A DNA stretch of 63,890 nt, counting the filler, from Octopus bimaculoides (taxonomy: Eukaryota), in assembly GCF_001194135.2 (NCBI RefSeq). It is 10 parts of 10 records of this genome, joined end to end, with 100 filler letters (N's around TTAATTAATTAA, not from the genome) between each part and the next. Parts side by side here need not be neighbours in the genome. Positions count along the whole stretch, not along the records: positions 48,309 to 55,711 come from NC_068989.1; 9 more parts are not named here. One strand, written 5' to 3'. The translations under genes and the position numbers were made by a program. The notes below the pieces were generated by a model. It was given only the letters and a program-made list of their open reading frames with translations. It did no database searches and was not told the origin of the DNA. Below are positions 42,600 to 55,711 of this stretch, piece after piece. Each line of letters opens with the position of its first letter. Position 1 is the stretch's first letter.

Positions 42600-43065
42600 C
42601 GCGTTTCATTGATAGTTTGAATATGTATGCATGTATGTATGTAAGTTTTTTTGCTTGGCGCTCGCGGGCGAACTTTTCGTAAGGTGCCAAGTAATCTCTC
42701 TGCTTTGACTCGCTCCTGTCCTAACTTGAGGCGTGCATTCCTCTTCATACTAGGTATTTTGACAATTTTTGTTGCTGTTTCTGTAGCAATAGTTTTCCAC
42801 ATAACATAGTGACAGGTTTCTAGCCTCCTCCTTTTGCATCCTGTAAGAGATTGCCGTGGAAAGAAGGGCTAGGCTCTCGGGTAATGTTTTCCGATTGCCA
42901 AAAGAACAAATATAAAAGACAGATATACAGTGGGTAGCATTACATTGAGGGATGAATGAAAAGACAGACTCAAGAAGATATGGTACGCTATCTTCAATGA
43001 AGATTTGAAGCAACTTAGCATCAATGCAGGCAACTATGCTCATAACCTGAACTTGTAGTCGTTCA
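42600..43065 (+). pseudogene. Decayed RTE-clade LINE ORF C-terminus
   Basis: VERRARLSGNVFRLPKE and KDRLKKIWYAIFNEDLKQL resemble the RTE motifs RRRLRWxGHVxRM and GRPKKTWxDxIxEDLKxL; stops and frameshifts present. Confidence 0.45.
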
Positions 43066-43124
43066 GGTTGAGGATGGTTCTACCTCACAAGACATTGGTC
43101 TGCCTTTATATGATATATGAAAGA

Positions 43125-43320
43125 ACTCTTTCCACCGGGCGAAATGCTTAGTGGTATTTCATCTGTCTTTACGTTCTGAGTTCAAATGATCGCTGGGGTC
43201 GACTTAGCTTTTTATCCTTTCGAGGTCGATAAATTAAGTACCAGTTGCATTCTGGGGTCGATCTAATCGACTGCTCTCCCTCCCACCAAATTTCAAGCCT
43301 TGTGCCTATAGTATAAAGGG
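43125..43320 (+). mobile_element. SINE, second family
   Basis: GGGCGAAATGCTTAGTGGTATTTC...GTTCTGAGTTCAAAT...GAGGTCGATAAATTAAGTACCAGTT. Confidence 0.8.
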
Positions 43321-43865
43321 TCATATGTACCATCCTTTAAACAAAAGGCTGTGACAGAGCGGTAAGAGTTCCTTTCTCGCAGAAGGCATATCCCATCTCA
43401 CATTTTATAAGATTGTCAAGATTTTTGTCCGCTAGGACTTTTCCTGATTTTTTTAAAGAAAGAAACCTACTATTTGTTATCAGTTTCAGCTTGGCGTGCT
43501 AACGGTTCTGCCGGCTCACCGCCTTAGATGGTACATATGCCATTTGCCCTCCGTCACACAATGAAATATATTTCATTCAAATTATTTGCCAGACTCGTTT
43601 TCTCTTATTCATGTTTTGAGAGGATTAGCTATCATGTTTCCTGATTAGCAAGACAAAGATAAGTTACTTTTATTCTTATCCCTATCACGGATCTCTGTAA
43701 TTGGATTATGCAAGGCTGGCCCCAGTTCGCAGCAACAATTTCTACCTAGATTCGAGACTTTTGGAAAAATATTTCACACCGAGAGTTTCCCCTGTTTGAA
43801 AAATAATCTAGCATAAAACAATTTATTATTAGTCATCTTTACACTCGAAGCAGTATGTGCATCTA

Positions 43866-43903
43866 TGTTGTTGTTGTTGTTGTTGCTGTTGTTGTTGTTG
43901 TTT

Positions 43904-43937
<34 letters not shown>
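43866..43937. repeat. (GTT)n microsatellite
   Basis: Direct reading. Confidence 0.95.
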
Positions 43938-44561
43938 CAAGAACCTTACTCGACGTGCTTAAAATGTCTGTTTTTATTTTCGTTTGTATTTACTGCTAAC
44001 ATTTTCTGTTACAATTGAAATAGTATTATACACACAAATATATGTATATATATATATGTGTTTATATATATATATGTAAATATGTATATATATGTATACA
44101 TACATATGATGTATATATATATATGTGTGTGTGTATATATATGCACTCAACATAAATACATACATACATACATGCATACATACAAACAAACAAACAAACA
44201 AATACACATACATACCAGTAGTGTTTACTGCATGAATGCAAGTCATTCAACGAATACTTAAGATATATAATACATACATGACTGAAAATAACAAATCTAA
44301 TTTTAATGTAAACCTTATATTTTTATGAGAGACAGCTGGAAGGAGGCTACGTGCATCCCGGGTTGCACGTACCCTCTTTCAACTTTATGGCTTGAATTTT
44401 TCAAATTACATTTACTGGTCTTTATCGTTAGCATACATACATACATACATACATACATGCATGCATGCGAACATCTGGAAATGCATACATACATCTATTA
44501 ACATATATATTCTTTCATACATATATGTACATACGCATATGTACATACATATATACATATA

Positions 44562-44740
44562 GGCGCAGGAGTGGCTGTGTGGTAAGTAGCCTGCTTACCA
44601 ACCACATGGTTCAGGGTTCAGTCCCACTGCGTGGCACTTTGGCCAAGTGTCTTCTACCGTAGCCTCGGGCCGACTAAAACCTTGTGAGTAGATTTGGTCG
44701 ACGGAAGCTGAAAGAAGCCCGTCGTATATCTGTATATATA
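44562..44740 (+). mobile_element. Major-family SINE 5' half with intact Pol III boxes
   Basis: GGCGCAGGAG-TGGCTGTGTGGT (A box) ... GGTTCAGTCCC (B box, 44615-44625), running into (TA)n and a gap. Confidence 0.85.
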
Positions 44741-44945
44741 TATATATATATATATATNNNNNNNNNNNNNNNNNNNNNNNNNNNNNNNNNNNNNNNNNNN
44801 NTTAATTAATTAANNNNNNNNNNNNNNNNNNNNNNNNNNNNNNNNNNNNNNNNNNNNTATATATATACATCCTTTAAATATACGTGTGTCTGTGTGTGTG
44901 CGTGTGTATTTTATATATATATTTATACATATACACATACAGCTT

Positions 44946-44981
<36 letters not shown>

Positions 44982-45234
44982 GATGGTATGAGTTGTATGT
45001 AAAAATTAGTACTATTTTTAAGAGTAAATACATCAGCTATATAAGGATATATTGGGCTATGTAATCTGTACGTAGTGCCTTTGTGCTAGCATGTGTGTGA
45101 GTGTGTGCATCTGCATGTGTGTGCATTTGCATGTGTGTGTGCATGCGTTTCTGAGCAGGTGTGTGTGGTTATGTATTCTTTATGATTGAGGGGAGGTCTA
45201 CATTTATCGAAGTAAATTTAACGTATACACGAAG

Positions 45235-45640
45235 GCTGCGAGCTAGCAGAAACATTAGCACGTCGGCAATAATGGTTAGCAGTATTTCCTCTGCCGTTAC
45301 GTTCTGAGTTCAAATTCACCGATATCGACTTTGCTTTCATTCTTTCGGGGTCGATCAATTAAGTACCGGTTACACACTGGGGTTGATGTAATCCCTTGTT
45401 TGTCCCCTCTATGTTTAGCCCCTTGTCAGCAATAAAGAAATAAGAAACGTTAGCACGTCGGGCGAAATGCTTAGCGGTATTTCGTCTGTCTTTATGCTCT
45501 GAGTTCAAATTCCGCCAAGGAGGACTTGCCTTTCATCCTTTCGGTGCCGATAAATTTAGTACCAGTTTCGTAGTATGGTCGATTTAATAGAGTGACCCAT
45601 TTCCCAAACGTTTCGGACCTTGTGCCCAGAGTACAAATGG
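45235..45640 (+). mobile_element. Two tandem copies of the second-family SINE
   Basis: GTTCTGAGTTCAAATT...TTTCATTCTTTCGGGGTCGAT motif twice (~45300 and ~45500). Confidence 0.75.
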
Positions 45641-46436
45641 ATATTTAACGTGTATACACCAATATGAATATAAAACCATGACCTTAGCCTTGTGTGTGTA
45701 TGTATGTATGTATGTATCCAACCCTCTTTCTATATGTCTATGTAGCTTCCTTCTGTCTATCTATTTATTTATATACATATNNNNNNNNNNNNNNNNNNNN
45801 NNNNNNNNNNNNNNNNNNNNNNNNNNNNNNNNNNNNNNNNNNNNNNNNNNNNNNNNNNNNNNNNNNNNNNNNNNNNNNNNNNNNNNNNNNNNNNNNNNNN
45901 NNNNNNNNNNNNNNNNNNNNNNNNNNNNNNNNNNNNNNNNNNNNNNNNNNNNNNNNNNNNNNNNNNNNNNNNNNNNNNNNNNNNNNNNNNNNNNNNNNNN
46001 NNNNNNNNNNNNNNNNNNNNNNNNNNNNNNNNNNNNNNNNNNNNNNNNNNNNNNNNNNNNNNNNNNNNNNNNNNNNNNNNNNNNNNNNNNNNNNNNNNNN
46101 NNNNNNNNNNNNNNNNNNNNNNNNNNNNNNNNNNNNNNNNNNNNNNNNNNNNNNNNNNNNNNNNNNNNNNNNNNNNNNNNNNNNNNNNNNNNNNNNNNNN
46201 NNNNNNNNNNNNNNNNNNNNNNNNNNNNNNNNNNNNNNNNNNNNNNNNNNNNNNNNNNNNNNNNNNNNNNNNNNNNNNNNNNNNNNNNNNNNNNNNNNNN
46301 NNNNNNNNNNNNNNNNNNNNNNNNNNNNNNNNNNNNNNNNNNNNNNNNNNNNNNNNNNNNNNNNNNNNNNNNNNNNNNNNNNNNNNNNNNNNNNNNNNNN
46401 NNNNNNNNNNNNNNNNNNNNNNNNNNNNNNNNNNNN

Positions 46437-46468
<32 letters not shown>

Positions 46469-46657
46469 CACAACCCCACTATTTACTGACTTATATATAT
46501 ATATATATGTGTGTGTGTGTGCATATATATATATATGCACACACATGCATATGTATATATATTAACTAAATTCAAATTCAATAGCGTATTTAGATACCAC
46601 TTGCTATTATTAATATCTGTAATAATACTTATTTCATTTAAATATATATATATATGC

Positions 46658-46700
<43 letters not shown>

Positions 46701-46753
46701 CGTGTGTGCGCGTGTGCGCGTGTGTGTCTGTGTGTCTGTGTGCATATATATTT

Positions 46754-47086
46754 GCGTAGAAGTGGCTGTGTGGTAAGAGGCTTCTTTCTCCACCACATAG
46801 TTACGGGTTCAGTCCCAGTGCGTGGCACCTTGGGGTTTAATCTTCCACTACATTCTCGACCGACCAAAGCCTTGTGTGTGGATTTGGTAGGCGGAAACTC
46901 GTGTCTATGTTTGTCCTATCACCATCGGTTGACAACTGATGTTGGTGTGTTTACCTACCCCTAACTTAGCGGTCCAGCAAAATAAGTACTAGGCTTATAA
47001 AGAATAAGTCCTGGCGTCGACTTGTTCGAGTGAAGATGGTGCTCAATCATGGTCAATGCCAAATGGCTGAAACATATAAAAGAATA
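46754..47086 (+). mobile_element. Major-family SINE, near full length, no internal microsatellite
   Basis: AGTGGCTGTGTGGTAAG...GGGTTCAGTCCCAGTGCGTGGCACC...AAGAATAAGTCC...GGCTGAAAC. Confidence 0.85.
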
Positions 47087-47865
47087 ACAATACACACACG
47101 CGATCGAGCGCGCACACACAGAAAGACAAACATATACGGGATTTGAACCTAACAAACTTGTTACAAATGTTTCTATTCCACATTTACATTAATAGCAGAC
47201 TAGTATAAACCAAACACAAAAGTATGTAGTCGTGAAGATCAAGTTTTTAGCATTTCTTTAGTTTGTATAAGAAAATATTCATAATTTTGTTTCAAAGTGT
47301 TTTGCTTGTTTGAACTCAAATTCACTAAGCATATGTGTCTGATGAATTTCTGTATATTAATACTGCATATGTACGTGTAAATATATTAAAATATGCACAC
47401 ATACACTCACATGCACATAAATATGTATGTATATATCTGCATATANNNNNNNNNNNNNNNNNNNNNNNNNNNNNNNNNNNNNNNNNNNNNNNNNNNNNNN
47501 NNNNNNNNNNNNNNNNNNNNNNNNNNNNNNNNNNNNNNNNNNNNNCATACATACATACATGCATACATACATACATATATACATACACACACATATATAC
47601 ACACACACACACGCACACACATATATATATATATACATACTCATATACATATACATATACTCGAGCTTTGTTAGGAGCCTGCGACAATTGAATTTGGTCG
47701 GAAACCGAGTCAAGCAGTTATTTATACAGATATATTGTTTATTGATATTTAGCTGAAGCAACGGAATGAATTCAAGGGCCAAGAGTTTCGTGTATTGGTA
47801 CATATCAAATCTGCGAAAGCAAAAAATCTCTCGGACTGAGTCACTCAGTTTGCCTCTGCTAAATA

Positions 47866-48200: not shown

Positions 48201-48310
48201 AGAGAGAGNNNNNNNNNNNNNNNNNNNNNNNNNNNNNNNNNNNNNNNNNNNNTTAATTAATTAANNNNNNNNNNNNNNNNNNNNNNNNNNNNNNNNNNNN
48301 NNNNNNNNCG

Positions 48311-49732
48311 CAAGACTGTAATACATGTAAATGTGAAACGAACGGTAGAGTAAGTTGTACAAATAAACCTTGTAACTGTATGTACAATGGAAACACCTAC
48401 AAAATAGGTACTACATTTAAAAAGGATTGTAATACGTGCACATGTAAAGCCGATGGCACTGTAGATTGTACAACAAATCAATGTACCTGTACTTATAAAA
48501 ATGAGGTTTATAATTTCGGAGCAGTGTTCAATGATGATTGTAATACTTGCAGATGTCAATACAACGGACAAGTTGATTGTACAAACAGACCCTGCCGGTG
48601 TACGCATAAAGGACAAACTTATCGAATTGGTGATAGATTTTCGGAAGATTGTAACCAATGCCAATGCTTATCGACTGGATATGTTCGATGTTCTACCAAC
48701 ATTTGCAGATGCACTTACAACAACCAGATTTATAACGTAGGTCAATCATTTACGCAAGACTGTAATACATGTAAATGTGAAACGAACGGTAGAGTAAGTT
48801 GTACAAATAAACCTTGTAACTGTATGTACAATGGAAACACCTACAACATAGGTACTATGTTTAAAAAGGATTGTAATACGTGCACATGTAAAGCCGATGG
48901 CACTGTAGATTGCACAACAAATCAATGTACCTGTACTTATAAAAATAGGGTTTATAATTTCGGAGCAGAATTCAATGATGATTGTAATACTTGCAAATGT
49001 CAATACAACGGACAAGTTGATTGTACAAGGAAGCCATGTAAATGCACATATAAAGGACAAATTTATCACATTGGCAATAAATTTCATGAAGATTGTAACC
49101 AGTGTGAATGTTTATCGAGCGGTGAAGTGCAGTGTTCTAAGAATCTATGTAAATGTGTTTACAATGGAAATACCTACCAAATTGGTACAACATTTAAAAA
49201 GGACTGTAATACGTGCACATGCAAAGCTGATGGTAGCGTAGACTGTACAACAAATCCATGTACTTGCACTTACAAAAATAGAGTTTACAATTTCGGAAAT
49301 CAATTCAAAGATGGCTGCAATACTTGTACTTGTCAATACAATGGTGAGGTTAGCTGCACTAAAATACATTGTTCCTGTAATTACAACGGTAAACGTTATG
49401 AAATTGGTTCTGTATGGTATAATGATTGCAACAAATGTCAGTGCACCTCCGATGGGAGAGTGGATTGTGAGCAAAAAGTATGCAGTAAGCCCTGTGTATA
49501 CAAAGGAAAAACTTATTCTGTTGGTGAAACATTTAAAGATGTCTGCAATACTTGTCGATGTGGACAATTTGGTGAAGTAGCTTGTACTAAAATGTATTGC
49601 CCCCCGACAACATGCCAGTATTATGGAAAATCTTACAAAGAGGGAGAAATGTTCATGACTCAAGATAAATGCAATGTTTGTCGATGTTCAAATGGGAAGG
49701 CTAAATGTACCAAGTATGATTGCTATCGTATG
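48311..49732 (+). CDS. Large exon of a cysteine-rich protein with 12 full and 1 partial 37-40-aa six-Cys VWC-N/pacifastin-like modules
   Basis: Open from the gap edge (QDCNTCKC...) to the donor GTGAGT at 49733 (phase 0 after ...CYRM); 474 codons, 77 Cys; module pattern C-x16-CNxCxC-x3-G-x3-CT-x3-C. The 5' exons and signal peptide are not visible. Confidence 0.9.
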
Positions 49733-50463
49733 GTGAGTAAAGTATTTTATTAAAGTTTTGTTAGTGTTTTACTATCCCTAACGTAACAAATTTAATTCAT
49801 CCTTTACACTTTGTAACCTCTATTTTATTTCTCATATTAAACAGAAAATAATCATCCAGCAATTAGATGATATTTAGCATAAAAACTAGAATGTTATCAA
49901 ACTACTGAATTCATGTAACGACCAAATGGTACCAGAGATCACTTTTCAATTATCAATCGGTCTTGTTCATTTTAATGTTTTAGAAATGTCTCGAAGAAAG
50001 CCATTGTTGTCTTCTAAGTTTATTTATTTATTATATATGCATACATTCAATAATATATATGAAAGTAAATGGTTAACTTTCAATTTTCAATTTAATGTTA
50101 TTGACACTAATGTCAAATCGCTACGTCAAATTGGCACGACATTGCTGTTAATGTTAGAAATATTCATGTTTATTTAAGAAATATTATTTTCAACTGTTTA
50201 AATAGTGAAACGTACTCTTTGGAGATATATTTGTGAATTATTCTATATACAAAATATTTCAGGATATAGCTTATGAGAATGTGAACTGGGCTTTAAAATC
50301 TGAGGCTCTGATGAATTTTTAATACTCTATGTGATATTTAATCTAATGCACAATTGTTGAAATTTAAATTTTGTATTTTACTTAGTGATACTAAATTTGA
50401 AATACAATATGTATATCCAGTCCGATAAATATATTAATTTCTTGCAAATTTATTTTATTGCAG

Positions 50464-50481
50464 AAACAACAGTACGGATGA
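50464..50481 (+). CDS. Predicted terminal coding exon (KQQYG-stop) of the six-Cys module gene
   Basis: Acceptor TTTATTTTATTGCAG (AG at 50462-63); phase 0 gives AAA CAA CAG TAC GGA TGA; AATAAA 61 nt after the stop. Confidence 0.65.
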   Translation, partial: KQQYG

Positions 50482-50541
50482 AGAACTGTTAATTTATTTT
50501 GATAATTCCAATAATTTTGATACTACAAATATAATTTTTTA

Positions 50542-50547
50542 AATAAA
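50542..50547 (+). terminator. Polyadenylation signal AATAAA
   Basis: Follows the stop at 50479-81; a T/GT-rich downstream element (TTTTGTTGTTT) lies ~20 nt later. Confidence 0.6.
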
Positions 50548-50934
50548 ACATATATCTACCACAATTTTGTTGTTTAATTTATTAATTTAAATTTCTTTAT
50601 TAGAATGATAGTCAACCGAGTTATCCATTTAATTTTTAGGCCGAGTTATTTCCTATTAGCATTTTAGAATTCCTAATCTATTTCCAATATAAACAAAATT
50701 TCAACTCAGCCGCGAAAATGCAAACGTAAAAGATCTGATATAATTATATGCGGGAGAAAAACTTTCTTATACTTTCATACTTGTCAACAACCCTGCATTG
50801 AAGAACATCTCTTCCACAGAGAATATTTGTAGACAACTGCTTCAAGGCCTGTAGTGTCTTTAGACTGATTATAAATTCATATTTATACCAATAATTCTTG
50901 GTGAATTACAGTACTGTTATATTTTTTCTTCTTT

Positions 50935-51303
50935 TACTCGTATCAGTCATTTGACTATAGCCATGCTAGAACACTGACATAAGGGGTTTTAGTCGATGAA
51001 ATCGACCCCAGGACTTATTCTTTGTAAGCCTAGTATTTATTCTATAGGTCTGTTTTGCCGAACTGCTAAACACACCTGCATCGGTTGTCAAGTGATGGCG
51101 GATGGGGGGGGGGCACGCAGACTCACAGACACACACGCATATATATATATATATACACACACAACGGGATCCTTCAGTTTCCGTCTACCAAATCCACTCA
51201 CAAGGCTTTGGTCAGCCCGAGGCTATAGTAGATGACACTTGTCCTAGGTGCCACGCAGTGGGACTGAACCTGGAACCATGTGGTTCAGAAGCAAGCTTCT
51301 TAT
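50935..51303 (-). mobile_element. Major-family SINE with internal CA/TA microsatellite
   Basis: Same landmarks as 14535-14944. Confidence 0.85.
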
Positions 51304-51604
51304 CGTTAGCAAATGTTAATAATCTCAAAGAGCGAGGACTTCAGGCAAATAAAGTCATCAACAAATAGGCTGTTTGTAAGTACATTTTACAAGCTAAACA
51401 GTAAAAATTTACAAGGCTTTCCTTTAGTTCAACATGTAACGCCTATCGATATCGAAGTTGTTGAAATTCCGGCAATAGTGTCATTTCATTTTATTAGAAA
51501 CTATATCCTTCAGGAAAGGCAGACTTGACATAATTAAAAAAGATATGCATGAACAAAAATACATACAGGCGTATATATCATATCTATATGTTAAGGTATT
51601 TAAA

Positions 51605-51822
51605 TATTGACTTCAAATTTTGGCACAAGGCCAGCAACTTCGGGTGAGAGATAAGTCGATTACATCAACTCCAGTGTTCAACTGGTACTTATTCTATTGA
51701 CGCCGAAAGGATGAAAGGCAAAGTCGACTCCAGCGAAATTTGAACTAAGAACATAGAGACGGATGACATGTTGATAAGCATTTTACGTTGCGCGCTAACG
51801 ATTCTTCCAGCTCGTTGCCTGA
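51605..51822 (-). mobile_element. SINE, second family
   Basis: CAAATTTTGGCACAAGGCC...GGATGAAAGGCAAAGTCGAC...GCTAACGATTCTTCCAGCTCG. Confidence 0.8.
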
Positions 51823-52569
51823 AGGAGTTTAAATATGAATATCGAAAAAAGAAGGGGTTAAACTAATATACTCTTCGTAATTTTCATAAAGTACACATAT
51901 CACAATATACTAGTTCCTAGTTGAGTATGAAGCTATTTTCTGGAGTCACAAATAAGTAAATTTTATTTTAAATTATATGGTTCATTGGGAGAAATTTCAA
52001 CTATAGTCATAACATTTACGCTCCATATCCGGGAGCAAACCCAGACCTGCATATTATTCTCTCTCCCCCCCCATATATATATATATATATATATATANNN
52101 NNNNNNNNNNNNNNNNNNNNNNNNNNNNNNNNNNNNNNNNNNNNNNNNNNNNNNNNNNNNNNNNNNNNNNNNNNNNNNNNNNNNNNNNNNNNNNNNNNNN
52201 NNNNNNNNNNNNNNNNNNNNNNNNNNNNNNNNNNNNNNNNNNNNNNNNNNNNNNNNNNNNNNNNNNNNNNNNNNNNNNNNNNNNNNNNNNNNNNNNNNNN
52301 NNNNNNNNNNNNNNNNNNNNNNNNNNNNNNNNNNNNNNNNNNNNNNNNNNNNNNNNNNNNNNNNNNNNNNNNNNNNNNNNNNNNNNNNNNNNNNNNNNNN
52401 NNNNNNNNNNNNNNNNNNNNNNNNNNNNNNNNNNNNNNNNNNNNNNNNNNNNNNNNNNNNNNNNNNNNNNNNNNNNNNNNNNNNNNNNNNNNNNNNNNNN
52501 NNNNNNNNNNNNNNNNNNNNNNNNNNNNNNNNNNNNNNNNNNNNNNNNNNNNNNNNNNNNNNNNNNNNN

Positions 52570-52673
<104 letters not shown>

Positions 52674-52889
52674 TATACATATACATACATATATACATGT
52701 GTGGGGATGGGTGGGAGGAGATGTACTTGCATAGGAATTGTTTTGATTTGAGATCGTGTGCTGAAATTAAAGAAATTGCTTCGTGGAAGACACCAATTAA
52801 CCATTCGGAAATACACAAAGAACGTTAACTTCACTTAAACATACATTTTAAGAACTTTTCGTGGATTGCTACCTTATTCTAAGGAATAG

Positions 52890-53085
52890 ACTCGTTGTTT
52901 ACGGCAAGGAAAATGGTTGGCGACATTTCGTCTTCACGTTCTGAGTTCAAATTCCACCGAGGTCCACTTCGCCTTTCATCCTTTCGGGGTCGATAAAATA
53001 AGTACCAGTTGAGTACTGAGTCCGGTGTTATCGACTTACCTCCTCCACCGAAATTGTTGGGCTTGTGCCAAAATTTGAAACCAAT
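52890..53085 (+). mobile_element. SINE, second family
   Basis: CGTTCTGAGTTCAAATTCCACCGAGGTCCACTTCGCCTTTCATCCTTTCGGGGTCGATAAAATAAGTACCAGTT...CTTGTGCCAAAATTTG. Confidence 0.8.
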
Positions 53086-53846
53086 ATTTTAGTAAAATAA
53101 ATAAACTGATAAATATGACATTAATTTCAATGTTTATAGATTACCTATTGTTGTTCTTCGAAAATTTGGTTAAATTTCGATACTTTCACCCGCACGAGTT
53201 TCACTAAGAAAAATTAAAAAAACTCAGATTTTTCGCATGGAATCAAGTAGAATCTGAAAAAGGGTTGGGGAAAAACCGGACCTCACCTATCCTGGAATCA
53301 TTTAAATTTTTTTCTACTTTCGTTGAATGTATTACGGTGACCTCCTAATATGCTACAATACGCTTTTTTTTTTGGTCCAGAAAACGGGGTGGAACCCTCG
53401 GAAATTTCACCCCTCACTCCCATTTGGAAGTATACGCGCACGATTTTCACTAAGAAAAAAGAAACTAGGATTTTTTGTGGTGAATCAAGTACTCTGACCT
53501 CTTAATATGCAGCAAACCCCATGGTTTTGTTCGGAAAAAAGATGGGGTAGGAAACCAGACCATCTATCCTGGAATTATTAGATATTCGTTTTTCGATCTT
53601 ATAGATCAAACACACATACACACACAAAACATTGAACGTTTGTGGAGGGACATAAAGGAACAGATAAAAAGGCCAGGTATTCGGTCGAAATATCTGCATG
53701 AATACCTGGCTAGATATTTATTTATTTTCTCGGAGAAAAATAAACCACTCTTACTCCACAAATTTTTTCGATAAGTATCCCAATTATATGTACACCTCAC
53801 AGACCAGCAGCATCTTTCGATTACATAAGCACAACTCCAGAGAAGG

Positions 53847-53988
53847 GGGCCTATGCAGATTCGCACCTCTCCTTACAAAATGCATTTTTCTGAAAAAAGG
53901 TTATTTGGATTCCTAGGTTTTACATGTCGGAATAAACTTTTTCAGAAAAATGCATTTTTGAAGAGGAGGTGCGAATCTGCATTAGCCC
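53847..53988. repeat. Foldback inverted repeat, ~58-bp arms and ~25-nt spacer
   Basis: ATGCAGATTCGCACCTC...AAAATGCATTTTTCTGAAAAAAG matches the reverse complement of CTTTTTTCAGAAAAATGCATTTTT...GAGGTGCGAATCTGCAT. Confidence 0.85.
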
Positions 53989-55118
53989 CACCCGCAAAAT
54001 CTCGTGATTTTAGTGGGTGCATCGAAGAGCTTTTCCGTCATCCTCAAAAACTTCATGGATACGAAAAGACAAAACCGACGTATATGACAGGTATCTAAAA
54101 AATATTTCTGTGTACTTTTCTCTGTTTATTCATATAAGTTATTGAAACTGTTGCTCGCGTACACACAAAAGCAAAAATTCTCCAGGCATTTGTTTGTTAT
54201 TTTTAGCATATCGACATTTACAGTTTTAGACAGTTTGGAGTTTTCATATAAAATTTGAAATGAAAAAAATTTTTCCATTTTCTTAATCTCCGTATTTTTC
54301 CACGTACATTCAAATATAAATTTTAATTTTGAAAAAGTTCAGCGGTAAATATGCAACTTTTATTCTTTCTCTCTAAACTCCTCACATACAAAGATATATT
54401 TATTTTAAATATATTTATTTTAAATCGCTCCTTTTATTCTTTTATTCTATCTCCCTCTCACCTTACACGAAAATGTAACCCAAGCGAGTCTGGGTGTGAA
54501 AGATTTTCGTTTCTAAAACGCTGGTATAAAGCCGAAAATATTTAGTGGAGAAAAAGTATTTTTGGGGGATTAATTCATAATATGACGGCAAAGAAGTAAG
54601 TAGTACTTTGTCGGTGAATTTTACCTGTCTACATATACATACACGCTATTGAATATACATATACATACATACATATATAAATATATATGTATATATATAT
54701 NNNNNNNNNNNNNNNNNNNNNNNNNNNNNNNNNNNNNNNNNNNNNNNNNNNNNNNNNNNNNNNNNNNNNNNNNNNNNNNNNNNNNNNNNNNNNNNNNNNN
54801 NNNNNNNNNNNNNNNNNNNNNNNNNNNNNNNNNNNNNNNNNNNNNNNNNNNNNNNNNNNNNNNNNNNNNNNNNNNNNNNNNNNNNNNNNNNNNNNNNNNN
54901 NNNNNNNNNNNNNNNNNNNNNNNNNNNNNNNNNNNNNNNNNNNNNNNNNNNNNNNNNNNNNNNNNNNNNNNNNNNNNNNNNNNNNNNNNNNNNNNNNNNN
55001 NNNNNNNNNNNNNNNNNNNNNNNNNNNNNNNNNNNNNNNNNNNNNNNNNNNNNNNNNNNNNNNNNNNNNNNNNNNNNNNNNNNNNNNNNNNNNNNNNNNN
55101 NNNNNNNNNNNNNNNNNN

Positions 55119-55162
<44 letters not shown>

Positions 55163-55380
55163 TACACTATGTATGACTTCAGAAAAAAATATTTTCAGCA
55201 TAAAATACACACAGTATGAATGTGAACATATTAATCCACATTCTATATATATTTAATAACGAACCATGTAATCTGTACTATGGAAAATATATTTCTGTAA
55301 AATGTTGGAAGTGGGTGGGGGTGAAATTTCCGAGTGTTCCACTCCACCCTACTCCGTTTGCCGGACTAAAAAAGGGTTTT

Positions 55381-55711
55381 GTGCTCTTTGCAAAAAATGA
55401 CCAACAACTCAAAGGCCTACTAGCGATTGTTAAACAATTCAGTGATGACATCAGGATGTAATTTGGCCTTGATAAATGTGCAAAAGCTACCTTTATCAAA
55501 GGAAAAATGACAAATACATCTAATGTGAACCTTGACCAGCAAAATGTCATAAAAGAGTTAGAACCAGCAGAGAGCTACAAATACCTAGGGGTAATTGAAG
55601 GGGACAATATCAAGCACTCAGTGATGAGGGAAAGGATCAGAAGAGAATGTTATCGCAGGGTGAGAGCAATACTGAAGACAGAGCTGAACGCGAGAAACAG
55701 GATCGAAGCGA
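55381..55711 (+). pseudogene. R4/Dong-like non-LTR retrotransposon RT fragment
   Basis: LFAKNDQQLKGLLAIVKQFSDDIRM*FGLDKCAK...ESYKYLGVIEGDNIKHSVMRERIRRECYRRVRAILKTELNARNRIEA; premature stop at 55459-61; cut by a gap. Confidence 0.8.

What the first reader, a model, noticed from the sequence alone, without database searches (positions are those of the whole stretch)
48311..49732. Single-exon array of at least 13 six-cysteine modules intermediate between VWC and pacifastin
Seen: each module has the VWC-type front half (CxYxGxxYxxGxxF) and the pacifastin signature CNxCxC-x3-G-x3-CT-x3-C, with six Cys rather than the ten of a full VWC domain. Most modules are joined by a single residue (C-x-C), without the dibasic processing sites of insect pacifastin precursors. 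At the pacifastin P1-P1' positions the residues are NK, TN, NR, TN, NK, TN, RK, KN, TN, KI, QK, KM, KY; module 6 (CTRKPC, 49022-49039) has the Arg-Lys pair of locust trypsin-inhibiting pacifastins. Established: pacifastins are best known from arthropods. Inference: an unprocessed multi-headed serine-protease inhibitor (saliva, ink, egg or immune role) or a disulfide-rich rod-like matrix or growth-factor-binding protein.
Basis: partly seen in the sequence, partly recalled or inferred. Interest (0 to 1): 0.7.

Follow-up and report, generated by a model that had tools for sequence, protein, structure and literature searches.

The report
Octopus-type tandem pacifastin-like domain exon
This is a real coding exon, probably from an octopus, that encodes at least 13 back-to-back small disulfide-knotted modules of the long "ancestral" pacifastin type, a class already described in molluscs, so it is a new and apparently unannotated member of a known family whose protease-inhibitor role is plausible but untested.

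Summary
Window 48311-49732 (+) is one open frame of 474 codons with 77 cysteines. They form one 5'-truncated and 12 complete six-Cys modules (C-x16-CNxCxC-x7-C-x4-C). Ten junctions are a single residue, and no linker has a dibasic site.

Pfam scores the exon as Pacifastin_I (E 1e-73, 13 stretches). Of the 11 modules scored singly, 10 pass the pacifastin cut-off and none passes the VWC cut-off. The VWC-like front half is an N-terminal beta-hairpin.

This architecture (C1-C2 loop of 13-20 residues) was described in May 2026 as the "ancestral" pacifastin class. That class is common in molluscs, rarely processed, and also found in myxobacteria. Pacifastins are also listed among components of cephalopod salivary (venom) glands.

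A new point here: the whole module, signature included, aligns full-length to the E modules of human VWF and of mucins. Those modules are spacers, not inhibitors, so the signature alone does not prove inhibition.

Best reading (0.45): a secreted multi-headed inhibitor of trypsin-like proteases, acting through five Lys/Arg-P1 heads. Main rival (0.35): a non-inhibitory rod or spacer.

Verdict: new member of a known kind; modest interest.

The parts
48311..49732 (+). Coding exon (474 codons seen). It is open at the 5' edge of the piece and encodes 1 partial and 12 complete six-Cys modules.
   Evidence: Pfam Pacifastin_I E 9.7e-74 with 13 stretches.
48317..48373 (+). Module 0 (partial, C2-C6), loop CTNKPC. 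It is identical in protein to the C-terminal half of module 4.
48377..48817 (+). Modules 1-4 (types A, B, C, D), each 36 aa and joined by single residues T, R, R. Loops are TN, NR, TN, NK.
   Evidence: Pacifastin_I scores 33.1, 29.1, 25.7 and 33.5 bits against a cut-off of 27.9.
48821..49150 (+). Modules 5-7 (types A', B', C'). Loops are TN, RK, KN.
   Evidence: Pacifastin_I scores 32.3, 31.2 and 28.4 bits.
49154..49483 (+). Modules 8-10 (A'', B'' and a divergent module). Loops are TN, KI, QK.
   Evidence: Pacifastin_I scores 35.4, 31.2 and 29.6 bits.
49493..49723 (+). Modules 11 and 12, set off by the longer linkers SKP and PPTT. Loops are KM and KY. Module 11 is the most pacifastin-like module.
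   Evidence: Module 11 scores 36.9 bits. It aligns to locust SGCI/SGTI variants in PDB at E 4e-6.
49022..49039 (+). CTRKPC: Arg-Lys at P1-P1' (module 6).
   Evidence: The P1 position is defined as C5-x-P1-P1'-x-C6 (alignments).
49133..49150 (+). CSKNLC: Lys at P1 (module 7).
49355..49372 (+). CTKIHC: Lys at P1 (module 9).
49583..49600 (+). CTKMYC: Lys-Met (module 11). This pair is reported as enriched in the ancestral class.
49706..49723 (+). CTKYDC: Lys-Tyr (module 12). This pair is reported as enriched in the ancestral class.
48309..49250 (+). 444-bp (four-module) tandem super-repeat, about 2.1 copies. Identity between copies falls from 100% to about 60% along the unit.
   Evidence: TRF result and windowed identity.
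49733..49738 (+). GTGAGT, a consensus-like splice donor directly after ...CYRM. The alternative is read-through to the stop at 49751-49753.
   Evidence: Sequence. Inference only.

Best explanation
The exon belongs to a gene of an octopus-like cephalopod. The gene encodes a secreted, disulfide-rich protein built from a tight tandem array of long ('ancestral') pacifastin-like domains.

Each 36-residue module is predicted to fold as an N-terminal beta-hairpin followed by the three-stranded pacifastin core. The modules are strung together by single residues into an extended chain that resembles tandem fibronectin type I modules.

Proposed mechanism (inferred, not shown): the C5-C6 loop of each module is a canonical, substrate-like protease-binding loop. 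The five modules with Lys or Arg at P1 (6, 7, 9, 11, 12) would block trypsin-like S1 serine proteases by the standard Laskowski mechanism, without the array being cut into single domains. The Asn/Thr/Gln-P1 modules would act as spacers or as heads of unknown specificity.

The array grew by tandem duplication of a four-module unit inside the exon.
For: **Identity (strong).**
- Pacifastin_I scores 243 bits over 13 stretches.
- 10 of the 11 modules scored singly exceed the Pfam cut-off, whereas VWC (23.6-26.7 bits) and FnI_RECK (at most 29.9) never do.
- By sequence, the exon's significant PDB matches (E <= 0.01) are all pacifastin inhibitors.
- The AlphaFold model of module 6 has pLDDT 92.4. It superposes on trypsin- and chymotrypsin-bound pacifastins at 0.7-1.9 A over 26-32 residues with 41-48% identity.
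- The C4-C5 loop has the pacifastin form x3-G-x3 with an invariant Gly, not the Trp-containing loop of E modules.
- The C1-C2 loop of 16-18 residues matches the published 'ancestral' class.

**Inhibitor role (indirect).**
- 17 of the 120 listed homologues also carry Kunitz, Kazal, WAP, antistasin or TIL domains. One example is P0016, which has a visible Kunitz domain.
- The K-M and K-Y pairs are the ones reported as enriched in this class.
- Pacifastins are found in octopus salivary glands, which are rich in S1 proteases.

**Real gene.**
- dN/dS is 0.08-0.37.
- There is no N-x-S/T sequon, against 8 expected; 0 of 5000 shuffles reached zero. This fits a secreted binding surface.

**Octopus origin.**
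- The LINE reverse-transcriptase fragment is 86% identical to an Octopus vulgaris protein.
- Interspersed repeats match O. bimaculoides at 72-85%.

**Extended chain.**
- The four-module model has pLDDT 90 and pTM 0.51.
- It matches the fibronectin 2F1-3F1 pair over 81-87 columns.
Against: - No long-type pacifastin-like domain has been assayed; the 2026 paper says so itself.
- Eight of the 13 heads have Asn, Thr or Gln at P1. These are poor P1 residues for known S1 proteases.
- In the wider family the commonest 'P1' is Glu (35%).
- The full module, including the CNTCxC...CTxxxC signature and the spacing, also occurs in VWF and mucin E modules. Those are spacers, not inhibitors.
- The reactive loop is not more variable than other surface positions among the duplicated modules.
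- With one-residue linkers, the next module starts at P5'. It may obstruct a bound protease.
- The signal peptide and 5' end lie outside the piece, and expression is unknown.
- No predicted protein in the 5.8-billion-cluster database contains this exon; the best hit is 37% identical.
Confidence: 0.45

Rival explanations
1. The protein is a non-inhibitory structural rod or spacer. The array would be an extracellular, disulfide-stiffened string of E-module/FnI-like beads, for example part of a mucus, egg-case, cuticle or other matrix protein, or the spacer region of a larger adhesive protein. The 'reactive loop' would then be just a conserved structural turn.
For: - The family profile aligns full-length to the E modules of human VWF (350-384, 829-863) and MUC5AC, at E about 1e-8 for the whole chain. 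Cys spacing and the CNTCxC...CTxxxC signature are identical.
- Foldseek gives TM 0.78-0.82 over all 36 residues to these modules.
- E modules are described as disulfide-rich spacers.
- A VWC/pacifastin protein is present in the Lottia shell matrix.
- The 2026 study finds the ancestral class partly embedded in matrix-type architectures.
- Single-residue linkers and the match to the fibronectin tandem FnI pair suggest a rod.
- Most P1 residues are Asn or Thr.
Against: - Pfam scores every module higher for Pacifastin_I than for TILa, VWF-like or FnI models. TILa hits only 1 of 12 modules.
- The C4-C5 loop is of the pacifastin (Gly) type, not the E-module (Trp) type.
- No VWD, C8 or TIL partner is seen in the exon.
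- Homologues are often fused to bona fide inhibitor domains.
Confidence: 0.35
2. The protein is a chordin/kielin-like binder of BMP or other growth factors. The modules would act like the SD1 subdomains of VWC domains and sequester TGF-beta-family ligands.
For: - Pfam VWC scores E 9.8e-49 over 12 stretches.
- NCBI names the molluscan relatives 'kielin/chordin-like'.
- The best Foldseek hit of the four-module model is NEL, a VWC-repeat protein, at E 1.4e-5.
Against: - Only profile positions 1-36 (single modules) or 1-42 (whole exon) of the 57-position VWC profile are matched.
- The second subdomain and its CCxxC motif are absent. Each module has six Cys, not ten.
- No single module reaches the VWC cut-off.
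- The family profile hits no solved VWC domain at E <= 1.
- The NEL match has TM 0.23 and rmsd 17 A.
- The 'kielin/chordin-like' names are automatic.
Confidence: 0.07
3. The exon is a recently expanded array that is unexpressed or decaying. This could be a dead paralogue, or an assembly expansion of a repeat with no current function.
For: - The exon is absent from every predicted protein in the database.
- The first 270 bp of the two super-repeat copies are 93-100% identical, as would be seen after a very recent duplication or a mis-assembly.
- The surrounding sequence holds gaps, microsatellites and a dead LINE.
Against: - 480 codons are free of stops and frameshifts in AT-rich DNA.
- All 77 Cys and all invariant Asn and Gly residues are kept.
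- dN/dS is 0.08-0.37, with saturated synonymous divergence between the older copies.
- A consensus splice donor lies at the end of the exon.
Confidence: 0.08

Closest known systems
'Ancestral' (long-loop) pacifastin-like domains of Mollusca, other non-arthropod metazoans, fungi and myxobacteria (Rodriguez-Aguilar et al., Sci Rep 2026, PMC13388995)
   Same: - Six-Cys scaffold with Asn after C2 and Gly in the C4-C5 loop.
- A C1-C2 loop of 13-20 residues rich in Tyr, Phe and Gly, forming an N-terminal beta-hairpin.
- Tandem repeats.
- Linkers poor in dibasic sites.
- K-M, K-Y and Q-K pairs at P1-P1'.
- The homologues found here are the same kinds of protein: Octopus, Mytilus, Liolophura, and Sorangium/Polyangiaceae proteins with Kunitz domains.
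   Different: - This copy uses the x16 rather than the commoner x18 loop.
- It joins modules by a single residue.
- It has unusually many Asn/Thr P1 residues.
- It packs at least 13 modules in one exon.
- It is at most 37% identical to any database protein.
Classical arthropod pacifastins (MEROPS family I19: crayfish pacifastin light chain; locust PMP-C, PMP-D2, SGPI-1, SGPI-2)
   Same: - Core C2-C6 signature.
- Predicted three-stranded core that superposes at 0.7-1.9 A.
- 41-48% identity over 26-32 residues.
- P1 at the same loop position.
- An unprocessed multi-domain chain also occurs in crayfish pacifastin (nine domains; from my own knowledge) and in Trichoplax (42 domains).
   Different: - The C1-C2 loop is 16-18 residues rather than 9-12. 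The Pfam profile aligns only from module residue 10 or 11 onward.
- There are no dibasic processing sites.
- P1 is mostly Asn, Thr or Lys rather than Arg, Leu or Ala.
E modules of VWF and gel-forming mucin D assemblies (E1 and E' of VWF; MUC2, MUC5AC, MUC5B, FCGBP)
   Same: - Full-length alignment with identical Cys spacing (x16, x2, x1, x6-7, x4).
- The same CNTCxC and C[T/S]xxxC motifs and the same Y/G front half. An example is VWF 829-863, [35 protein letters not shown].
- TM 0.78-0.82 over 36 residues.
   Different: - E modules occur singly after a TIL module inside VWD-C8-TIL-E assemblies.
- Their C4-C5 loop is 6 residues and contains Trp, with no Gly.
- They act as spacers.
- Here the modules form a homotypic array with pacifastin-type loops.
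VWC (chordin-like cysteine-rich) domains and fibronectin type I modules
   Same: - The front-half motif and the CxxCxC motif.
- A two-sheet FnI-like fold.
- Tandem modules resemble the fibronectin 2F1-3F1 pair.
   Different: - VWC has ten Cys, a second subdomain and a CCxxC motif, all absent here.
- FnI has four Cys.
- No module reaches either Pfam cut-off.
Octopus bimaculoides and O. vulgaris 'VWFC domain-containing' or 'kielin/chordin-like' proteins (P0003, P0012, P0076)
   Same: - The same module family, probably from the same genus.
- 11-13 modules per protein.
- Lys-rich loops.
   Different: - Only 29-32% identity.
- An x18 loop.
- Thr/Pro-rich linkers of 10-21 residues.
- One module per ~168-bp exon, spread over 37 kb, against at least 13 modules in one exon here.

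Membership tests
Pacifastin (Pfam PF05375, MEROPS I19) | Profile score above the curated cut-off | tested here: met
   The whole exon scores 243.3 bits against a cut-off of 27.9. Ten of the 11 modules scored singly reach 28.4-36.9 bits; module 3 scores 25.7.
Pacifastin (Pfam PF05375, MEROPS I19) | Core pattern C2-N-x-C3-x-C4-x(2-3)-G-x(3-6)-C5-T-x3-C6 | tested here: met
   CN, CxC and Gly are present in 13/13 modules. Thr follows C5 in 10/13, with Ser in two modules and Glu in one.
Pacifastin (Pfam PF05375, MEROPS I19) | C1-C2 loop of 9-12 residues (classical, 'conventional' type) | tested here: not met
   The loop is 16 residues in 11 modules and 18 in the last. The Pfam profile starts aligning at module residue 10 or 11.
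Pacifastin, 'ancestral' class (PMC13388995) | C1-C2 loop of 13-20 residues forming an N-terminal beta-hairpin rich in Tyr, Phe and Gly | tested here: met
   The loop is 16-18 residues. DSSP on the models shows paired short strands before the three-stranded core.
Pacifastin (Pfam PF05375, MEROPS I19) | Disulfide topology C1-C4, C2-C6, C3-C5 | tested here: inconclusive
   Model coordinates could not be read. The evidence is indirect: superposition on solved pacifastins at 0.7-1.9 A and on E modules over all 36 residues.
Pacifastin (Pfam PF05375, MEROPS I19) | Canonical tight-binding inhibition of S1 serine proteases through the C5-C6 loop | not testable with these tools
   Five of the 13 loops carry Lys or Arg at P1. 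No assay was possible.
Insect pacifastin precursors | Dibasic (KR/RR) processing sites between domains | tested here: not met
   The linkers are N,T,R,R,N,T,K,K,T,S,SKP,PPTT. Dibasic pairs occur only inside modules.
VWC domain (PF00093) | Ten Cys with both the C2xxC3xC4 and C8C9xxC10 motifs; profile score above cut-off | tested here: not met
   Each module has six Cys and no CCxxC motif. Only positions 1-36 or 1-42 of the 57-position profile are matched. Single modules score 23.6-26.7 bits against a cut-off of 27.6.
E module of VWF/mucin D assemblies (Pfam TILa) | Six-Cys module with x16/x2/x1/x6/x4 spacing, aligned over its full length | tested here: met
   Profile A2 aligns positions 1-38 to VWF 829-863 and 350-384 and to MUC5AC 838-872. 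The whole chains score E 4.5e-9 to 1.5e-8; the single-module stretches score about 23-27 bits.
E module of VWF/mucin D assemblies (Pfam TILa) | Position after a TIL module within a VWD-C8-TIL-E assembly; TILa profile score above cut-off | tested here: not met
   No VWD, C8 or TIL hit lies in the exon. TILa scores 26.6 bits against a cut-off of 27 for the whole exon and hits 1 of 12 single modules. The part of the gene 5' of the piece is unseen.
Fibronectin type I (PF00039, FnI_RECK PF25028) | Four-Cys FnI module; profile score above cut-off per module | tested here: not met
   FnI_RECK scores 17.5-29.9 bits per module against a cut-off of 30. fn1 hits 1 of 12 modules at E 0.07.

The most novel reading that the evidence does not exclude
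The array may be a living intermediate between structural E/VWC-SD1 modules and true pacifastin inhibitors. It would be a semi-rigid, unprocessed rod in which a minority of Lys/Arg-P1 heads inhibit proteases, while interleaved Asn/Thr-P1 modules are pure spacers set at fixed distances.

That would be a 'ruler' holding several proteases, or alternatively a rod that has not yet acquired inhibition at all. Either outcome would show experimentally when inhibitor function arose in the E-module/pacifastin superfamily. It would also test whether the many 'ancestral pacifastins' of molluscs, fungi and myxobacteria are inhibitors at all.
Probability: 0.2. Interest if true: 0.5.

Novelty: new member of a known kind. 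Interest (0 to 1): 0.3.

Why it matters
**Against novelty.** The module type, its presence in molluscs and cephalopod salivary glands, its lack of processing sites and its dual VWC/pacifastin annotation are all already in the literature.

**What the locus adds.**
1. It is an apparently unannotated and divergent paralogue, at most 37% identical to any predicted protein.
2. Its organisation is extreme: at least 13 modules in one exon, joined by single residues, grown by a recent four-module duplication. The octopus paralogue examined has one module per exon.
3. It gives a clean set of natural P1 variants (Arg, Lys, Asn, Thr, Gln) on one scaffold. This is a convenient test bed for whether long-type pacifastin-like domains inhibit proteases at all, which nobody has measured.

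**A cautionary point.** The same signature occurs in the non-inhibitory E modules of human VWF and of mucins. This is relevant to how the 'ancestral pacifastin' class is being interpreted.

Tried and rejected
- **Further exons.** I looked for more exons of the gene in 49733-55711. There are no Cys-rich open stretches, and no tblastn hit from 120 homologues at E < 0.2.
- **Antisense ORFs.** The ORFs of 113-172 aa across the exon, and two other ORFs, have no Pfam hit. They are by-products of the codon composition.
- **RNA genes.** No tRNA or Rfam family was found in the piece.
- **Orthologue search.** Nothing above 38% identity was found, so a one-to-one orthologue of known function could not be found or excluded.
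- **Reactive-loop hypervariability.** This would be the classic inhibitor signature.
  - My hand count over the duplicated module pairs gives 8 of 33 inferred substitutions in the 3 loop positions, about 2.9 times the mean of other non-Cys positions.
  - Several other surface positions (9, 12, 13, 24, 28) are equally variable.
  - The test is therefore neutral and was not used.
- **Full VWC or chordin-like membership.** Rejected: six Cys instead of ten, no second subdomain, and every module below the cut-off.
- **D-assembly membership.** Rejected for the visible part, which has no VWD, C8 or TIL.
- **Organism.** It could be narrowed only to an octopus-like cephalopod, through a LINE fragment and interspersed repeats.
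- **Disulfide topology and steric access.** Neither could be read from the models, because coordinates are not returned.
Full report
**1. What is in the sequence.**

The piece 48309-55711 begins inside an open reading frame. From 48311 the + strand reads 474 codons to ...CYRM, followed directly by GTGAGT. Read on, the frame stops 7 codons later.

The translation has 77 cysteines in a strictly periodic pattern. It divides into one module truncated by the piece edge and twelve complete modules. Eleven of these have the spacing C-x16-C-N-x-C-x-C-x7-C-x4-C. The last has x18 and x6.

Ten junctions are a single residue (N,T,R,R,N,T,K,K,T,S). The last two are SKP and PPTT. No linker holds a dibasic pair.

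The invariant residues are the six Cys, Y8, G11, N19 and G27.

**2. It is a real, constrained coding sequence.**

- A 444-bp unit of four modules is repeated about 2.1 times. The order of module types is D-A-B-C-D-A-B-C-A-B, followed by three divergent modules.
- Identity between the two full copies falls from 100% at the start to about 60% at the end. This suggests a recent unequal exchange or gene conversion over the first ~270 bp, laid on an older duplication.
- Between paralogous modules dN/dS is 0.08-0.37, with synonymous sites saturated in the older pairs. The protein is therefore under purifying selection.
- Antisense ORFs over the exon have no family match.
- No further exon of this kind lies downstream in the piece.

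**3. What the module is.**

Pfam scores for the whole exon:

| Family | E-value | Stretches | Profile coverage |
|---|---|---|---|
| Pacifastin_I | 9.7e-74 | 13 | |
| VWC | 9.8e-49 | 12 | best stretch covers profile positions 1-42 of 57 |
| FnI_RECK | 3.2e-38 | 12 | |
| TILa | 6.5e-06 | 7 | |

Taken singly, 10 of the 11 modules scored one by one pass the Pacifastin_I cut-off (28.4-36.9 bits against 27.9), and module 3 scores 25.7. Module 12 was scored only at E <= 1. None reaches the VWC cut-off (23.6-26.7 against 27.6) or the FnI_RECK cut-off.

The pacifastin profile always starts at module residue 10 or 11. The first ten residues, including C1, lie outside the classical domain and are what the VWC and FnI models recognise.

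Structure prediction:
- The AlphaFold model of module 6, built with 119 family sequences, has mean pLDDT 92.4. It shows a short N-terminal hairpin and a three-stranded sheet.
- Against the PDB, the best matches are protease-bound locust and related pacifastins (rmsd 0.7-1.9 A, 26-32 residues, 41-48% identity).
- With full 36-residue coverage and TM 0.78-0.82, it also matches a module inside VWF, MUC2, MUC5AC and FCGBP.

A profile of the family locates that module precisely. It is the E module of the D assemblies: VWF 350-384 and 829-863, and MUC5AC 369-403 and 838-872.

These human modules have the same Cys spacing and the same CNTCxC...C[T/S]xxxC signature. They differ mainly in the C4-C5 loop, which is six residues with Trp, against seven residues with an invariant Gly here and in pacifastins. 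The profile hits no solved VWC domain at E <= 1.

However, the module is a known type: a pacifastin core with the N-terminal hairpin of an E/FnI-like module.

**4. Relatives.**

The exon itself is in no predicted protein of the database. The best hits are 37-38% identical: a marine JGI contig and a MERC marine eukaryote sequence. Both also have single-residue C-x-C junctions.

Named relatives are:
- Octopus bimaculoides and O. vulgaris 'VWFC domain-containing' or 'kielin/chordin-like' proteins (29-32% identity);
- Mytilus, Dreissena and chiton proteins;
- myxobacterial proteins.

Almost all modules found in the first 60 of the 120 listed hits have the long C1-C2 loop (mostly 16-18 residues). 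Only the insect hit has 9-10. Seventeen of the 120 also carry Kunitz, Kazal, WAP, antistasin or TIL domains.

The O. bimaculoides paralogue P0012 is built from one module per ~168-bp exon over 37 kb. It sits next to another such gene. The single-exon, linker-less organisation here is therefore a real difference.

A LINE reverse-transcriptase fragment at the 3' end of the piece is 86% identical to an O. vulgaris protein. Interspersed repeats in the piece match the O. bimaculoides locus at 72-85%. The source is most likely an octopus.

**5. What is already known.**

- A 2009 survey found no pacifastins in molluscs but described a 42-domain, essentially unprocessed array in Trichoplax.
- Pacifastins have since been listed among proteins of cephalopod posterior salivary glands.
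- A 'VWC/pacifastin' protein was found in the Lottia shell matrix.
- A May 2026 study (PMC13388995) defines two classes. The conventional class has a C1-C2 loop of 9-12 residues and is found mainly in arthropods. The 'ancestral' class has a 13-20 residue N-terminal beta-hairpin rich in Tyr, Phe and Gly.
- That study found the ancestral class in 109 molluscan proteins, in fungi and in myxobacteria. It reports low predicted processing, enrichment of K-M and K-Y at P1-P1', and about a third of its proteins carrying other domains, among them matrix-type ones.
- The window's modules fit the ancestral class in every tested respect.
- That paper does not mention the E modules of VWF or mucins, and it states that inhibition by these domains is untested.

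**6. How it probably works.**

Shown:
- the domain family;
- the predicted fold;
- the tandem organisation without processing sites;
- purifying selection.

The four-module model is confident per residue (pLDDT 90) but has only moderate pTM (0.51). Two-module stretches resemble the fibronectin 2F1-3F1 pair. The array is therefore probably an extended chain with limited flexibility.

Inferred: the protein is secreted, and it presents the C5-C6 loops as canonical protease-binding loops. Five heads (RK, KN, KI, KM, KY) would fit trypsin-like S1 proteases, which are abundant in octopus salivary glands.

Against this:
- Eight heads carry Asn, Thr or Gln at P1.
- The family-wide commonest residue at that position is Glu.
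- The same signature exists in non-inhibitory E modules, which act as spacers.
- The loop is not more variable than other surface positions.
- One-residue linkers place the next module at P5', where it may hinder a bound protease. I could not test this.

My estimates are:

| Reading | Probability |
|---|---|
| Multi-headed serine-protease inhibitor | 0.45 |
| Non-inhibitory rod or spacer | 0.35 |
| Chordin-like growth-factor binder | 0.07 |
| Unexpressed or decaying exon | 0.08 |

**7. Verdict.**

This is a new and apparently unannotated member of a known kind, with an unusually compact organisation. Interest is modest (0.3).

Its main value is as a natural panel of P1 variants on one scaffold, for testing whether long-type pacifastin-like domains inhibit proteases at all.

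Noticed in passing
window 48311-49732; homologues P0001, P0003, P0005: There is no N-x-S/T glycosylation sequon in 474 residues, although Asn is 11% and Ser+Thr 16%. Residue shuffles expect 8.0, and 0 of 5000 shuffles reach zero. Where module position 5 or 26 is Asn, position +2 is never Ser or Thr. P0001 (82 Asn), P0003 and P0005 also have none. This suggests family-wide avoidance of N-glycosylation.
   Followed up: partly
profile A2 versus PDB: VWF 350-384 and 829-863; MUC5AC 369-403 and 838-872: The E modules of human VWF and of gel-forming mucins carry the full 'pacifastin' signature (CNTCxC...C[T/S]xxxC) with identical Cys spacing, and they align to the family profile end to end. The 2026 paper on 'ancestral pacifastins' does not mention them. 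The 'co-occurrence with VWC' that it reports may partly reflect overlapping Pfam hits on the same residues, as seen here.
   Followed up: partly
L002 (O. bimaculoides CM046611.1) 5001-42561 and 42790-47561: The octopus paralogue P0012 has one module plus linker per ~168-bp exon, spread over 37 kb. It is followed directly by a second pacifastin-like gene, so the two form a tandem gene cluster. This contrasts with at least 13 modules in one exon in the window.
   Followed up: partly
window 48311-48580 versus 48755-49024: The first ~270 bp of the two 444-bp super-repeat copies are 93-100% identical, whereas the rest is 50-80% identical. The cause could be a recent gene conversion, an unequal crossover, or an assembly effect.
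   Followed up: partly
window 55384-55711 (+): This is the C-terminal fragment of a LINE reverse transcriptase with an in-frame stop (IRM*FGLDKC), cut by the piece edge. It is 86% identical to an Octopus vulgaris RT-domain protein over 67% of the query, and 57-72% identical to many unnamed ENA contigs.
   Followed up: yes
window 50924-51257, 51600-51819, 52910-53088: Interspersed repeats match several places in the O. bimaculoides locus L002 at 72-85% identity. Two copies of one ~115-200-bp element (51648-51761 and 52929-53042, 79% complementary) lie in inverted orientation around a TA microsatellite and an assembly gap.
   Followed up: partly
window 52098-52569 and 54701-55118: Two assembly gaps (472 and 418 N) are each flanked by (TA)n or (TATG)-type microsatellites. 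These produce the spurious long 'YIYIYI' ORFs in the ORF list.
   Followed up: no
L001 (JGI 3300019005, contig Ga0193527_10009537) 400-2868: The closest relative (P0001, 822 aa, 37% identity) is a single ORF on a 3.5-kb JGI contig. It also consists of modules joined by single residues. Its source organism is unknown.
   Followed up: no
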